This document shows positions 10,451 to 35,378 of a stretch of 64,000 bases of DNA, piece after piece. Numbering within the stretch: position 1 is the first letter of the stretch; each line of letters opens with the position of its first letter. The position numbers were made by a program, and so were the translations under genes. Below the pieces are notes generated by a model. The model did no database searches and was not told where the DNA came from. It was given only the letters and a program-made list of their open reading frames with translations. The stretch is from Gracilinanus agilis (taxonomy: Eukaryota): positions 202,220,827 to 202,284,826 of the forward strand of contig NC_058130.1 of NCBI RefSeq assembly GCF_016433145.1. The letters are read 5' to 3'.

Positions 10451-12401
10451 GATCTGACCTTCCACTGTGGGCTCCCAACTTTCTGTTCACCTTCCAGGTT
10501 TCCCAGGCCCCAAACCTGCCCTCATCTGCTGGATGGATAAAGAGACAGAGGTCTGGGGTCCAGATGCCCGAAACCCCGAGGAGGTAGAGAAGAGAGGAAA
10601 GGAAGGCTTTGGAGGTGAGAAGATAGTTCAGTCTAATACACCCACATTTTTCCTTGGCCAGTCTTACCCACAGCTGTCCTCTAAAGAGCCTTTTCGACTA
10701 AGATATTCTGGTACCAGATCTGTGTTTCTTCTTCCCATTACTGGAGTTCAAGCAGGGTTGGAGAAATAAATCTGATTGCAGCCCTTTTTCATGAGTTGTG
10801 CAGAACTCAGCCCTTCTTATTATGCCCCTAAGATGATCCTGGTATCATTGTTGTTCAGTACTGTCCTACTCTTTGTGAGCCCATTTGGGGTTTTCTTGGC
10901 AAAGATGCTGGAGTGGTTAGCCATTTCCTTCTCCATCTCATTTTACTTTTGAGGAAACTGAGGCAAACAGGATTAAGTAACTTGCCCTGAGTCTCACAGC
11001 TATAGAGTCTGAGGCCAGATTTGAACCCAGGAATATGAGTCTTCTTGACTTCAGACCAGGTACTCTTATCTACTGCACCACTCCATAATCCCCTACTTCT
11101 TAGTGATTCTAATATATTTTATTCAGTGAATAATGCTAGGTCATGTTTAATGAGTTATTTCTATTCCTGACTGCAGAATCTCATTGAATCTTAAAACTAT
11201 CACCAAAGAAACAATACAGTTAATATGAATATTAACTGTGTATAATTAATCTTCTAATGTTAACTCAGTGTTACTCAAGGAAGTTTTTGTCCCACAGACA
11301 ATGACTGTTTTCTATGGAAGGAAGAGCTAAATCTCTGTGATCCTTCTGAACTGACATTGGTTATATGATTACCGACTTATTCCTGGAAAGCCACAAGAAC
11401 ACCTACAACATCAAACTAGCTATAGGTAGTTAATCCCTTTTAATTCTCCTGAGTGTGTGAATCCCATGTCAGTTTCTGTTTTGCTTCATGTTATTTTCAA
11501 AATAGACATTATTAGACAGATCTGACAGATTTTTGATCTGAATTCTAAACACTCCCTTTTTTCTGTAGGAACCAGGAACAAGGCTGAGAAATGGAAGAGA
11601 GAAGGGCCTGGAGTCCAGGAACCTGATGAAACACATAGGAAGAACAGTTTTTCATTTGAGGCTGTGCCAAACCCACAGCAAGAAGGCAGCAGCTCTTCCT
11701 GCGCTGATTGTGGCAAGACTTTGCATAAACACTCTATCACTGCACTTCACCAATGTAATCCCAACCAAAAGAGGTCATATACATGTCCTGATTGTGGAAG
11801 ACACTTTGCTTATCCCTATTTACTGGTCAGCCACCAGCGAATGCATTCTGGGGAGCGTCCCTACTCCTGTGATCAGTGTGAGGCACGATTCTTCCAAAAA
11901 AAGTATCTTGTCCAACACCAGCTAATTCACACAGGTGAGAAGCCCTACACCTGCCCTGAATGTGGACGCTGCTTCAGACAGAGAAGATCGCTGGTCATCC
12001 ATCAGCGGCGCACACACACAGGTGAAAAACCCTATTCCTGTCCTGATTGCAAGCGACAGTTTGTCTATCCCTACCAACTGGCTACTCATCGTCGTACCCA
12101 CACAGGAGAGAAACCATACTCCTGTGCAGAATGTGGTTGCCGCTTCACTTATTCCTCCTTACTAATAAGCCACAGACGCATTCATTCTGATGAGAGGCCT
12201 TTTCCATGCCCTGAGTGTGGGAAGAGGTTCAAAAGGAAGTACGCTCTTGAAGCCCACCAGTGGATCCATCGTTCTGGTACTGAGATTTGGAGAAGCATGC
12301 CATCAGCAAGACAGTCTGCAGCAGAATCCTCTGTCCAGGGTGCCCGGGATCCTCCTGTGCACTGTCGTTACTACCCAGATATATTCCAGGAGTGTGGGTG
12401 A
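10243..12401 (+). CDS. ZNF785: KRAB-C2H2 zinc finger protein, ZNF785-like; join(10243..10396,10498..10614,11569..12401), 367 aa
   Basis: Exon 1 is ATG + KRAB-A ([41 protein letters not shown]|gtgagg). Exon 2 (117 nt) is KRAB-B-like ([14 protein letters not shown]..|gtgaga). Exon 3 follows the acceptor ttctgtag, all phase 1 and in frame. It has 6 intact C2H2 fingers plus one degenerate finger and ends YPDIFQECG*. Fingers ([28 protein letters not shown]) and position match recalled human ZNF785. Confidence 0.85.
10850..11085 (-). mobile_element. MIR-related marsupial CORE-SINE in ZNF785 intron 2
   Basis: tcttggcaaagatgctggagtgg..gaggaaactgaggc..gatttgaacccagg. Confidence 0.75.
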
Positions 12402-14459
12402 GGGAATATGAGAGAGAGACCTGAAAAAGCTAACACCAGAGGGCTGTATCTTCTCTATAAAGCATGAGGTCAGGCCATCTATGTGCTGGGAGGGCAGTGA
12501 TAAGAACTGAGGGTGTAAAGTGACAGGAAATCTGGTAGAACTGCTGTGAGGAGTATTATGCAAACAGGAGATGAATAACAGAACTGATGATCTCAATAAG
12601 GAGTTTAAGTTAGACAGCTTGATCATAACAGATTGAGTTGATCATAACAGATTGAGTTGAAACTCCAGCCTTTCTTGGTAATCTACTCATGGTTCCAAAA
12701 TGTTTTGGGACCAAGAAGGGAATTAAATATAGGTTCTATCCCTTGCGGTTCTCAAAGAGAAGAAGGCAATATTCCCTCCTCTATTATTTTGACAGAGCTG
12801 GACATAGAATTGGTTTTCTTTTAGAAGGCATTGCCTCATGAAAGGTCTGGTAGATCATGTCCTGTTCAGACATGGAAGTGCCCCATGGACAATTAGCCTA
12901 TTAGATAATCCATGCATCCACCCCTAAAATAGATTGGCTCTAGGCAGCTGGCTAGTCACCTTGAAATTTGAACGTAAAATCTCTGAGCCCTACTTTTTCC
13001 TTGAGATAGGAATGTTCTACTGTATCCATGCCCCATTCTGGAAAAGATGCTCCATATATGAGCATTTACCAAATATTTATTCTGGGTACTCTAAAAGGGA
13101 GAATGTCCATTGTCTTGTGGCAGAGGTCCAAAGCTAATTTTCTATGTTTTCCTTCAACTCAACCCAAGTATTAAGGCTGAAGAGTGGAATGCCCTAGGTG
13201 TAGGGCAGTACCTTAACAGTACCTTCATTTTTCCTATACTGTGTTTTTTTCCACTGGGATAAACAGATTTTTAACTGATCCAGGCCTGCCCTGGAAATAG
13301 ATTTTTTTAATTAATAGCTCCCTTTACTTATTATCTGGAGTTACAAGCAACTGACAGAACTATTCTAATCTGTAACATAATTGTTTCATTACATGTCAAC
13401 CTTCTTTCTCATGGCAGGGATTTATAATTGTTCTTTTTTTCTTTTTTCTTTTTTCTGTTTGTGTTCATTCTTCTGACATTTTATACATGTTTCTCTTGCT
13501 CAGTTTCGTAAAAATAATTCTGGACTATCCCTTGCAAGTGCCTTATTCATACTTGTTGACTATTAAATTATTTTGTCTATATGGAATATCAGACTACTTT
13601 GTTTCTTTTGCCAAACAGTAGTTGTTTGCACAAATAATTATTTTAAATAAGTAAAATGGTCTTAATTCAAGACCCATATCTTACAATGAAAGGGTGTCCT
13701 GACAAATCCTGTAAAAACTAACTGGGCTTCCATAATTTTCCTTCACCTCGTCTTTTTGACCTTTTTATGTTATACAAAGTTCTTTCCAGCTCATAAAGTA
13801 TTGTCACATAGTAGTCTTTATGCCCAGTTTTCTACACCATGGATTTGTCTGGTTGCAAATTCTTTTAAAATTTGCTTTCTGTTGTCACATTGGTAGGATG
13901 GTATACAGAGGATTGAGAATTAGAGGACCTGGGATTAAATCCCCATGTTGGCACCTATCAGTGTGGTCTTGTACATATATAATCTCTGGGCCTCAGTGTC
14001 ATCTAAAAAATGTGGGGACGGATTGAGTGACCCTTAAGGTTCTTGACTGCTTGAAATTTGCTATCCTATATTAATTAAGCATTTTCTCTAGGCCATTTTT
14101 CTTTGGGGACACTTCCCTCATCTTTCTGCACCCTCTACTTCTTAGAAGCATCCTCTCTTTTCGAAAGGATGTTAACATTGGCATATTTTTGTAAATTTCA
14201 TTTCCCCAGACCACTCACTACACACCTTGTAGCAATTCCAAAGATGAAATTTTGGTACCCCCTTTTATTAATTTCAAACATTTATTAGGCACTTACTGTT
14301 GTATTTTAGAAAGATACATATACTTGGCATACTGTTGTGCGTTAGCGGTAGGTAGTTCTGGCCAGGATGATATTTTGTATTTTTTCCAAGATAGGGTTCA
14401 GACTCCCACCCAAATTCTCTGCAGCCATTGTAAGAAAGGTTGAGTGAAAAAAAGCCAAG

Positions 14460-33960: not shown

Positions 33961-35378
33961 GAAGGGTACTGTTGGAATGACTGACGTGGGATCAGATCTC
34001 CTCCACCATAATCTTGTGTCCGTCCCCCTCCCTACCTCAGGTTTTCCAGGTCCCAAACCAGCGCTCATCTCCTGGATGGAACAAGAAGCTTGGGACTCTG
34101 AGGCCAGCTCTACTGAGGGCGAAAAGGAGAAGCGAGCAATAAATTGTGGAGGTGAGGGATGGGTACAGAGTCCTGGACTTAAAGCCTGGAGAGATCCAAG
34201 TTCTGACTCTACTTATTTGGGTGACAGTAAATTAACAGCTTTTATGTGGAAACCAGTTCTGTGCCATGGCTGGTAGGGGGTGTTATTTCCCCAAAAGGAT
34301 TGTTATGTAGTGAGCAGTAGGATTCGAAAATAAAACAATCCTTTGATATAAGGGATGATTTTCTGAGAGTGAAGAACTATAAAAGCAAAAGATAGCAGTA
34401 AAAATTTATTTTTATATGTAAGCAAAACAAGTTGGATTCTGAATTATTCTTTTCCCCAAAGGATCTAAGAACAAGAACAAAGAGAATAGAAAGATGCTTG
34501 GAACTGAGGAAGGACCTGTGATCAAGAGACTGGAAGATGTTGGACAGCCTCTAACTGGGACCTTGGAACACAAGGAACATCCAGCAAAGCTTCCCTCAGC
34601 TCCCCATAGGGGCCTCCCTCCTTCAGGTCGAAGCCTCTGTGTCAACCCTCCAGCTTCTCCAAATAACAAACGCCATGGCTGCACCATATGTGGGAAGCAT
34701 TTTGCCTGGCGCTCCACCCTGGTGGAGCACATTTATACCCATACTGGTGAGAAGCCCTTTCGTTGTCCTGACTGTGGCAAAGGTTTCAGCCAGGCCTCTT
34801 CACTAAGCAAGCACCGAGCCATCCACCGAGGGGAACGGCCTCATCAGTGCCCTGACTGTGGCCGGGCCTTTACTCAGCGCTCAGCCCTTACTACTCACCT
34901 CCGGGTTCACACTGGTGAGAAACCCTACCAGTGTGCTGACTGTGGCCGATGCTTCAGCCAGAGTTCAGCCCTGTCACAGCATCATCGGGTCCACAGTGGT
35001 GAGACACCCTTCCCCTGTGCTGACTGTGGCCGTGCCTTTGCCCATGCCTCAGATCTAAGGCGCCACCAGCGTACCCATACAGGTGAAAAACCATTCTCCT
35101 GTCCTGATTGTGGACGTTCTTTCCGGCAGAGTTCAGAAATGGTTGCTCACAGACGAACCCACAGTGGGGAGCGACCCTACCCCTGCCCTGAATGTGGGAG
35201 GAGATTCAGCCAGAAGTCAGCTGTAGCAAAACATCAGTGGATCCATCGGCCTGGTGCCAGGGGCAGGAGGGGCCAGTTGGCTGAGGTACTACCTATGCAA
35301 CTTACCACTGTCCAGGGAGATTTAGATCCCCCAGTAGGGTTCCAGCACTACCCAGAGATCTTCCAGGAGTGTGGGTGA
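33762..35378 (+). CDS. ZNF764: KRAB-C2H2 zinc finger protein, ZNF764-like; join(33762..33915,34041..34151,34462..35378), 393 aa, 7 fingers
   Basis: KRAB-A exon of 154 nt (|gtgagt), KRAB-B exon of 111 nt (|gtgagg), and an acceptor ccccaaag in frame with ORF 34494..35378. Fingers [33 protein letters not shown] and [12 protein letters not shown], and the end [17 protein letters not shown], match recalled ZNF764. It may be co-orthologous to ZNF747. Confidence 0.87.

What the first reader, a model, noticed from the sequence alone, without database searches (positions are those of the whole stretch)
12240..35378. Fixed-geometry C-terminal module shared by all three KRAB paralogs
Seen directly: all three proteins end with the same architecture. 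A terminal finger with an unusual HQWIHR is followed by a linker of exactly 25 aa that is otherwise divergent (only V-x-G is shared), then DPPVx[CF][RQ][HY]YP[DE]IF[QE]ECG-TGA (12348-12401, 16599-16652, 35325-35378). The internal fingers differ completely (6, 2 and 7 fingers). Most KRAB-ZNF tails are short and unconserved. I recall the human orthologs ending the same way, which would mean conservation across therians. I know no named domain or function for it. Inference: it is a protein-interaction or C-end degron element that needs a free C-terminus.
Basis: partly seen in the sequence, partly recalled or inferred. Interest (0 to 1): 0.7.

Follow-up and report, generated by a model that had tools for sequence, protein, structure and literature searches.

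The report
Conserved tail motif of ZNF688/764/785
Three neighbouring KRAB zinc-finger genes of an opossum (orthologues of ZNF785, ZNF688 and ZNF764) all end in the same 17-residue peptide, unchanged since before marsupials and placentals split; it has no name or known function, looks like a flexible docking peptide, and does not need to be the very end of the protein.

Summary
Three + strand genes end with a terminal finger reading HQWIHR, a 25-aa spacer, DPPVxxxxYP[DE]IF[QE]ECG and TGA (12348-12401, 16599-16652, 35325-35378). The window is from the opossum Gracilinanus agilis. The genes are orthologues of ZNF785, ZNF688 and ZNF764.

- **Selection:** the 17-mer has no amino-acid change in any orthologue pair tested (pN = 0), while synonymous sites differ by up to 0.83.
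- **Spacer:** it is free between paralogues but constrained within orthologues, and is 25 aa in 203 of 213 proteins.
- **Distribution:** a tail profile against 1.84 billion representative proteins finds only therian ZNF764/688/785/747.
- **Annotation:** Pfam, PDB chain sequences and 8 million papers hold nothing for it.
- **Structure:** AlphaFold2 leaves the tail disordered, with or without the KRAB domain.

The free C-terminus / C-degron reading is not supported. Rodent and lemur ZNF764 carry 3-8 extra residues after ECG with the motif intact. The last Gly is Ser, Thr or Arg in some species, and Cys-Gly is not a known Gly-end degron.

Best reading: an undescribed, family-specific docking peptide for a partner protein. 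Published ZNF764 partners (SUFU, TFIIIC) are candidates but were not testable here. Interest is moderate.

The parts
10243..10398 (+). gene 1 (ZNF785-like): start codon and KRAB-A exon, ending [11 protein letters not shown] before a GT donor
10500..10583 (+). gene 1: KRAB-B exon ([12 protein letters not shown]...); 3' end approximate
11664..12194 (+). gene 1: last coding exon up to the terminal finger, holding five C2H2 fingers; the exon's 5' end was not determined (ORF start given)
12195..12272 (+). gene 1: terminal finger, ending HQWIHR
12273..12347 (+). gene 1: 25-aa spacer
12348..12401 (+). gene 1: 17-aa tail motif [17 protein letters not shown] plus TGA
14920..15075 (+). gene 2 (ZNF688): start codon and KRAB-A exon
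15192..15275 (+). gene 2: KRAB-B exon ([12 protein letters not shown]...); ends approximate
16107..16445 (+). gene 2: last coding exon up to the terminal finger (open frame from 16107, likely acceptor near 16135), holding the penultimate finger
16446..16523 (+). gene 2: terminal finger, ending HQWIHR
16524..16598 (+). gene 2: 25-aa Arg/Gly- and Pro-rich spacer, nearly invariant across therians
16599..16652 (+). gene 2: 17-aa tail motif [17 protein letters not shown] plus TGA
33762..33917 (+). gene 3 (ZNF764): start codon and KRAB-A exon
34043..34123 (+). gene 3: KRAB-B exon ([12 protein letters not shown]...); 3' end approximate
34494..35171 (+). gene 3: last coding exon up to the terminal finger, holding six fingers (ORF start given)
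35172..35249 (+). gene 3: terminal finger, ending HQWIHR
35250..35324 (+). gene 3: 25-aa spacer
35325..35378 (+). gene 3: 17-aa tail motif [17 protein letters not shown] plus TGA

Best explanation
The tail is a family-specific, intrinsically disordered C-terminal docking peptide. It was inherited from the common ancestor of ZNF688, ZNF764, ZNF785 and the primate copy ZNF747, and has been kept by purifying selection on the protein since before the marsupial-placental split. The 17-mer D-P-P-V-x-F-x-x-[YF]-P-[DE]-I-F-x-E-C-G offers a ridge of hydrophobic and aromatic side chains (V, F, Y/F, I, F, C) among prolines and acidic residues. It is held about 25 residues from the last finger, which carries an unusual Trp. 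I infer that it folds only on binding a partner protein that these DNA-bound factors recruit or are controlled by, in addition to KAP1 bound at the KRAB domain. It works as an internal-capable ligand and does not read out the free carboxyl end. Shown here: existence, selection, restriction to this family, predicted disorder, tolerance of natural extensions. Inferred: that it binds a protein. The partner is unknown; SUFU and TFIIIC are candidates taken from published ZNF764 interactomes.
For: - Selection: pN = 0 for the 17-mer in all 10 ZNF688 pairs among opossum, koala, devil, pig and elephant, with pS 0.09-0.83. The same holds in ZNF785-like marsupial pairs and in ZNF764 opossum versus pig. 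In ZNF688 the tail is as conserved as the KRAB box and fingers, while the roughly 100-aa middle region is not.
- Paralogues: motif pN 0.12-0.17 against pS 0.60-0.75; spacer pN is about equal to pS.
- Spacer length: 25 aa in 203 of 213 proteins.
- Distribution: the profile search of 1.84e9 representatives gave 26 hits, 23 of them therian family members or fused gene models and 3 spurious.
- Annotation: no Pfam match and no PDB sequence match.
- Structure: AlphaFold2 gives tail pLDDT 46-54 beside well-modelled fingers, and 37-40 in full-length koala ZNF688, so no docking onto KRAB is predicted.
- Natural extensions after ECG keep the motif intact.
- ZNF764 has specific partners beyond KAP1/HP1, namely SUFU (log2FC 5.9), GTF3C1-5 and PRMT1. 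These were found with C-terminally tagged baits, and SUFU also by two-hybrid (PMC6745500 text and supplement).
Against: - No binding was tested and no partner could be co-folded with the tools at hand.
- The published ZNF764 partners may bind elsewhere. The family's KRAB-A box ends TYGHLG, which resembles the GLI SYGHLS motif that docks SUFU.
- Seventeen near-invariant residues is long for a simple linear motif.
- A near-fixed spacer length fits a role tied to DNA-bound geometry equally well.
- AlphaFold2's low confidence is weak evidence for disorder.
Confidence: 0.6

Rival explanations
1. DNA or chromatin accessory. The basic Arg/Gly-rich first half of the spacer lies on DNA next to the last two fingers, and the 17-mer caps or positions this arm. 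On this view the module tunes DNA binding, which would matter most in ZNF688 with only two fingers.
For: The spacer length is nearly fixed at 25 aa. In ZNF688 the whole spacer is nearly invariant across therians. The last two fingers are shared with the tail as one module. The terminal-finger Trp is found only there.
Against: The 17-mer is acidic and hydrophobic (net charge about -3), which suits DNA contact poorly. The spacer of marsupial ZNF785-like is not basic. AlphaFold2 shows no packing of the tail on the fingers.
Confidence: 0.15
2. Self- or family-association element. The tail would bind the protein's own KRAB or fingers (autoregulation), or bind other zinc-finger proteins to form homo- or hetero-oligomers.
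For: ZNF785 was the largest hub, with 148 interactions, in a zinc-finger to zinc-finger interaction screen (PMC13678222). All paralogues carry the same tail and the same unusual KRAB.
Against: The tail stays at pLDDT 37-54 with the fingers and with the KRAB domain present in the AlphaFold2 models. The hub behaviour has not been mapped to any region.
Confidence: 0.1
3. C-end degron or another reader of a free C-terminus. The ECG-COOH end would be recognised by a ligase or a pocket that needs the terminal carboxylate.
For: 153 of 187 fetched proteins stop directly after ECG. Terminal Gly is the hallmark of KLHDC-type degrons, and KLHDC10 has a small hydrophobic pocket for the penultimate residue (PMC11568203).
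Against: ZNF764 of most rodents sampled and of a lemur is extended by 3-8 residues with the motif unchanged. The pig sequence after the stop reads the same residues, so this is a simple stop loss. Ends of ECS, ECT and ECR also occur. Cys-Gly is not among the consensus degrons. Selection covers 17 residues plus the spacer, far more than an end rule needs. Partners were recovered with C-terminally tagged baits.
Confidence: 0.07
4. Relic without a function of its own: the start of a lost finger (P-x-x-x-x-E-C-G resembles P-[YF]-x-C-x-E-C-G) cut by a stop, or a likeness kept by gene conversion or by a DNA or RNA element.
For: Four of eight positions match the start of the family's own fingers, and F in place of the first Cys is one base change away.
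Against: There is no Pfam finger hit on the tails at E up to 1. No finger traces appear downstream or in the other frames. pN = 0 beside saturated synonymous sites over about 160 million years excludes neutrality and a purely nucleotide-level constraint. Paralogue synonymous sites are saturated, so there has been no recent conversion.
Confidence: 0.02

Closest known systems
Subfamily-specific accessory modules of KRAB zinc-finger proteins (SCAN; DUF3669 of ZNF746/ZNF777)
   Same: A conserved extra element restricted to a small, old subfamily of KRAB zinc-finger proteins and kept alongside KRAB and the fingers. DUF3669 was likewise a conserved region of unknown function before it was shown to oligomerise and contribute to repression (PMC6923878, listed).
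   Different: Those are N-terminal folded domains of 60-90 residues with Pfam models. This is a 17-residue C-terminal peptide in a disordered tail, with no model and no published description found.
SIC domain of GLI/Ci zinc-finger factors (extreme C-terminal 27 residues that dock SUFU)
   Same: It is the very C-terminus of a C2H2 transcription factor, disordered until bound, and conserved. ZNF764 is itself a strong SUFU partner. GLI pairs the SIC domain with an N-terminal SYGHLS motif, and this family has TYGHLG at the end of KRAB-A.
   Different: No sequence likeness was detected, since the profile search returned no GLI. SIC is a beta-strand plus a five-turn amphipathic helix, whereas this motif has three prolines. 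SUFU binding by the tail is untested.
Gly-end C-degrons (KLHDC2, KLHDC3, KLHDC10; DesCEND pathway)
   Same: Most family members end in Gly.
   Different: The penultimate residue is Cys, not G, R/K/Q or W/A/P. The end is extended or substituted in several lineages without loss of the motif. The conserved stretch is much longer than a degron.

Membership tests
ZNF785 / ZNF688 / ZNF764 orthologue groups (KRAB C2H2 zinc-finger proteins) | N-terminal KRAB-A and KRAB-B boxes followed by a C2H2 finger array in the last exon | tested here: met
   KRAB-A and KRAB-B exons were located for all three genes. Pfam gives 6, 2 and 7 fingers. Database orthologues carry PF01352.
ZNF785 / ZNF688 / ZNF764 orthologue groups (KRAB C2H2 zinc-finger proteins) | Best matches are the named orthologues, in the same gene order as in other therians | tested here: met
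   The gene 3 tail is 100% identical to 'ZNF764-like' of Gracilinanus agilis. Gene 1 is 96% identical to marsupial 'ZNF785-like'. Gene 2 is 88-100% identical to ZNF688. The order 785-like then 688 is seen in koala and devil, and 688 then 764 in pig.
Short linear motif / molecular recognition feature | Lies in an intrinsically disordered region | tested here: met
   AlphaFold2 gives tail pLDDT 46-54 and 37-40, with no stable secondary structure. This is prediction only.
Short linear motif / molecular recognition feature | An island of conservation under purifying selection within less conserved flanks | tested here: met
   Motif pN = 0 in orthologues. Between paralogues the motif keeps 12-13 of 17 residues against 5-8 of 25 for the spacer.
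Short linear motif / molecular recognition feature | Binds a defined partner domain | not testable with these tools
   Candidate partners (SUFU, TFIIIC, PRMT1, HP1) are mammalian proteins that the complex tool does not accept.
Gly-end C-degron | Invariant free C-terminal Gly | tested here: not met
   153 of 187 proteins end ECG. Ends of ECS (6), ECT (2) and ECR (1), and extensions of 3-8 or more residues, occur with the motif intact.
Gly-end C-degron | Penultimate residue G, R/K/Q or W/A/P | tested here: not met
   The penultimate residue is Cys in 26 of 27 distinct 17-mers. The consensus is taken from PMC11568203.
Gly-end C-degron | Shortens protein half-life through a cullin-RING ligase | not testable with these tools
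   Needs a stability reporter.
C2H2 zinc finger (vestigial copy) | C-x2-4-C ... H-x3-5-H pattern or a match to a finger profile | tested here: not met
   No Pfam hit on the 53-aa tails at E up to 1. There is one Cys and at most one His in the 17-mer. No traces were found in other frames or downstream.
GLI-type SIC domain (SUFU-docking C-terminus) | Extreme C-terminal position in a C2H2 factor that binds SUFU | tested here: inconclusive
   The position is met, and ZNF764-SUFU binding is published in three data sets. The binding region in ZNF764 is unknown.
GLI-type SIC domain (SUFU-docking C-terminus) | Sequence or structure likeness to SIC (beta-strand plus amphipathic helix) | tested here: not met
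   The tail profile recovered no GLI protein. The motif holds three prolines, and AlphaFold2 gives no confident helix.

The most novel reading that the evidence does not exclude
The tail, perhaps together with the TYGHLG end of the family's KRAB-A box, is a SUFU-docking device. That would parallel the two-site SYGHLS plus C-terminal SIC arrangement of GLI proteins. A therian-specific group of KRAB zinc-finger proteins (ZNF688/764/785/747) would then be wired to the Hedgehog regulator SUFU, or alternatively to TFIIIC at CTCF-type boundary sites.
Probability: 0.2. Interest if true: 0.75.

Novelty: new member of a known kind. Interest (0 to 1): 0.5.

Why it matters
These genes sit in the orthologue of the human 16p11.2 zinc-finger cluster. 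Reduced ZNF764 dosage has been linked to multi-steroid resistance (PMC5282477, PMC6348741). Published domain maps of ZNF764 show only KRAB and the fingers, yet the most conserved non-finger, non-KRAB element of all three proteins is this tail. In ZNF688 the last 68 residues differ at no more than three positions between opossum and pig or elephant. A defined 17-residue motif gives a direct handle: point mutants, peptide pull-downs and co-folding could show what sets this old subfamily apart from ordinary KAP1-recruiting repressors. The natural rodent extensions already answer one design question, namely that C-terminal tags should not destroy the motif.

Tried and rejected
- Pfam scan of the three 53-aa tails at E up to 1: nothing.
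- PDB sequence search with the tail profile at E up to 10: nothing.
- Full-text search for the motif strings: no paper.
- Searches on ZNF688, ZNF764, ZNF785 and ZNF747: no description of the tail.
- Frameshift or lost-finger origin: the other two frames and 150 nt downstream show no finger traces.
- Packing of the tail on the last two fingers or on KRAB: not predicted by AlphaFold2.
- Recent gene conversion: rejected, because paralogue synonymous sites are saturated.
- Earlier notes of this scan: nothing relevant.
- Complex prediction was not used. The plausible partners are mammalian proteins that the tool does not accept, and tail-to-KRAB or tail-to-tail binding is not claimed here.
- The exons of the window's genes were never joined. 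All searches used single-exon references, and the joined step was left out.
- No contig taken for human was fetched. The loci are koala, pig, Asian elephant and Tasmanian devil.
- Hominoid proteins and short contigs of unknown origin were kept out of alignments A3 and A4.
- One look-up (P0163, cattle) found no gene on record.
- The N runs at 1263-1390 and 41659 were left as they are.
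Full report
**What is there.** Three genes on the + strand each consist of three parts. The first is an exon with the start codon and a KRAB-A box (10243-10398, 14920-15075, 33762-33917). The second is a KRAB-B exon (from about 10500, 15192 and 34043). The third is a last exon with the fingers (open frames 11664-12401, 16107-16652, 34494-35378). 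Pfam finds 6, 2 and 7 C2H2 fingers. Each protein ends with a finger whose helix reads HQWIHR, then exactly 25 residues, then a 17-mer and TGA. The three 17-mers are [34 protein letters not shown] and [18 protein letters not shown] six-frame scan finds no further copy in the window.

**Identity of the genes.** The tail of gene 3 is 100% identical to 'zinc finger protein 764-like' of Gracilinanus agilis, so the window is from this opossum. Gene 1 matches marsupial 'ZNF785-like' at 96% and placental ZNF785 at 56-59% over the last 52 residues. Gene 2 matches ZNF688 of 114 sequence clusters at 88-100%. Koala and Tasmanian devil have 785-like followed by 688, and pig has 688 followed by 764, in the same orientation. 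The primate copy ZNF747 also carries the tail.

**Is it more than chance or recent copying?** Between the three paralogues in the window the 17-mer keeps 12-13 of 17 residues. The spacer keeps 5-8 of 25, the last finger 18-23 of 26 and the penultimate finger 15-17 of 28. Synonymous sites are near saturation everywhere (pS 0.44-0.83). The DNA alignment breaks down directly after the stop. The likeness is therefore old and maintained at the protein level, not a product of recent gene conversion.

**Selection across species.** I compared the ZNF688 tail codons of opossum, koala, devil, pig and Asian elephant.
- The 17-mer has no amino-acid change in any of the 10 pairs (pN = 0), while pS reaches 0.83.
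- The spacer has pN 0-0.06 against pS 0.08-0.69.
- The last finger has pN of at most 0.033.

The 17-mer also has pN = 0 in ZNF785-like of the three marsupials (pS 0.40-0.60) and in ZNF764 of opossum against pig (pS 0.50). In a full-length ZNF688 alignment the KRAB boxes, the two fingers and the whole tail are nearly invariant between marsupials and placentals. The roughly 100 residues between KRAB and the fingers are not. The spacer is therefore free between paralogues but constrained within each orthologue group. Its length is 25 residues in 203 of 213 proteins, 26 in 5, 24 in 4 and 19 in 1.

**Distribution.** I built a 50-position profile of 25 tails and ran it against 1.84 billion representative proteins. 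It gave 26 hits at E up to 0.001. Of these, 23 are therian ZNF764, ZNF688, ZNF785 or ZNF747 models, or fused gene models that contain them, and 3 are spurious low-complexity matches. No monotreme, sauropsid or other protein appeared. That agrees with a published statement that ZNF764 has Theria-specific fingers (PMC7821633). Absence outside therians rests on annotated proteins only.

**Is it known?** Pfam gives no match for the tails. PDB chain sequences give no match for the profile. The motif strings occur in none of about 8.4 million papers and preprints. The functional papers on ZNF764 describe it as KRAB-A plus seven fingers and map its glucocorticoid-receptor contact to residues 1-96 (PMC5282477 and PMC6348741). 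I found no description of the tail.

**Structure.** AlphaFold2 on the last 98 residues of gene 2, with 92 aligned family sequences, models the two fingers at pLDDT 71-86. It leaves the 38 residues after HQWIHR at 46-54 with no secondary structure. Full-length koala ZNF688 with 32 orthologues leaves the tail at 37-40, so no docking onto KRAB is predicted. The tail behaves as a disordered region carrying a conserved peptide.

**The free C-terminus idea.** Of 187 fetched proteins, 153 stop right after ECG. Ten sequence clusters end ECS, ECT, ECR or ECGS. ZNF764 of murid and cricetid rodents, jerboa, kangaroo rat, guinea pig, gundi, a mole-rat and a lemur continues for 3-8 or more residues (ECGGWS, ECGGWCSK, ECGGQPQK, ECGRWPQK and others) with the 17-mer unchanged. 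In pig the codons after the stop read W-P-Q-R, the same residues as in those extensions, so the extensions arose by simple loss of the stop. This is a natural capping experiment, and the motif stays under selection when it is internal. Known Gly-end degrons have G, R/K/Q or W/A/P before the Gly (PMC11568203), whereas here the residue is an almost invariant Cys. The published ZNF764 interactomes were obtained with C-terminally tagged baits (PMC6745500). I therefore rate the C-degron reading at about 0.07.

**A lost finger?** P-x-x-x-x-E-C-G resembles the start of the family's own fingers, and F for the first Cys is one base change away. However, there is no profile match and no trace in other frames or downstream. 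Neutral decay is excluded by the selection data. At most this describes the motif's origin.

**Most likely mechanism.** The 17-mer presents V, F, Y/F, I, F and C among three prolines and three or four acidic residues. It sits in a disordered tail, at a near-fixed distance from a finger with an unusual exposed Trp that occurs only in this terminal finger. This is the signature of a peptide that folds on a partner. I commit to a docking motif for a partner protein at confidence 0.6. Existence, selection, disorder and tolerance of extension are shown here; binding is inferred.

Published data give candidates. ZNF764 pulls down SUFU (log2 fold change 5.9, its strongest prey), all five TFIIIC subunits and PRMT1, besides KAP1 and HP1 (PMC6745500 supplement). 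SUFU is also recorded by two-hybrid and by an independent AP-MS study. In that supplement SUFU occurs with only one other of the 101 baits. PRMT1 fits the Arg/Gly-rich first half of the ZNF688 and ZNF764 spacers.

GLI zinc-finger factors dock SUFU with an N-terminal SYGHLS motif plus their extreme C-terminal 27 residues (bioRxiv 10.64898/2026.01.06.698042). The family studied here has TYGHLG at the end of KRAB-A in most members, as well as the C-terminal tail. This parallel is suggestive, but it cuts both ways, because SUFU might bind the KRAB motif alone. None of this could be tested here, since the complex tool does not accept mammalian partners.

**Rivals.** I rate an accessory role in DNA binding at 0.15, self- or family-association at 0.10, the C-degron at 0.07 and a functionless relic at 0.02.

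**Limits and rules followed.**
- Exons of the window's genes were not joined. All searches used single-exon references, and the joined step was left out.
- No contig taken for human was fetched or compared.
- Hominoid proteins and short contigs of unknown origin were left out of the alignments used for folding.
- The N runs were not touched.

**Verdict.** This is a real, strongly selected, family-restricted and apparently undescribed C-terminal peptide motif in known genes. Its conservation claim is right and even understated. Its free-end mechanism is unlikely. Interest is moderate (0.5), and it would rise if a partner such as SUFU or TFIIIC is shown to bind the tail.

Noticed in passing
window 10243-10398, 14920-15075, 33762-33917, and family proteins generally: The KRAB-A box of this family ends [11 protein letters not shown] in most members (TYSHLG in window genes 2 and 3). 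YGHL is the core of the GLI SYGHLS motif that docks SUFU, and ZNF764 is a strong published SUFU partner. How unusual YGHL is at this KRAB position was not measured.
   Followed up: partly
window 16653-16760; L001 11602-11710; L004 11549-11655: The first ~100 nt of the ZNF688 3'UTR are about 97% identical among opossum, koala and devil. That is more conserved than synonymous sites of the adjacent coding sequence (pS 0.15-0.33). An ATTAAA signal lies near window 16860. This may be a conserved 3'UTR element.
   Followed up: partly
window 42226-43446 (+), with a GC-rich stretch at 40000-42000: A 406-aa open frame with an acidic N-terminus and ten C2H2 fingers but no KRAB box lies downstream of the ZNF764 orthologue, behind a CpG-island-like region (GC 0.63). 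It is probably the neighbouring non-KRAB zinc-finger gene of this cluster; it was not identified further.
   Followed up: no
window 1738-5460 (-): A string of broken open frames with LINE-1 ORF2-like (endonuclease and reverse transcriptase) sequence, i.e. a decayed L1 element upstream of gene 1. An N run lies at 1263-1390.
   Followed up: no
P0195, P0188, P0194, P0200 (database gene models): Several database models named ZNF689 or similar, of 677-1151 aa, contain the tail internally or at the end of a much longer protein. They look like read-through or fused gene predictions across neighbouring cluster genes, and several UniRef entries name ZNF688 or ZNF764 proteins 'ZNF689'.
   Followed up: no
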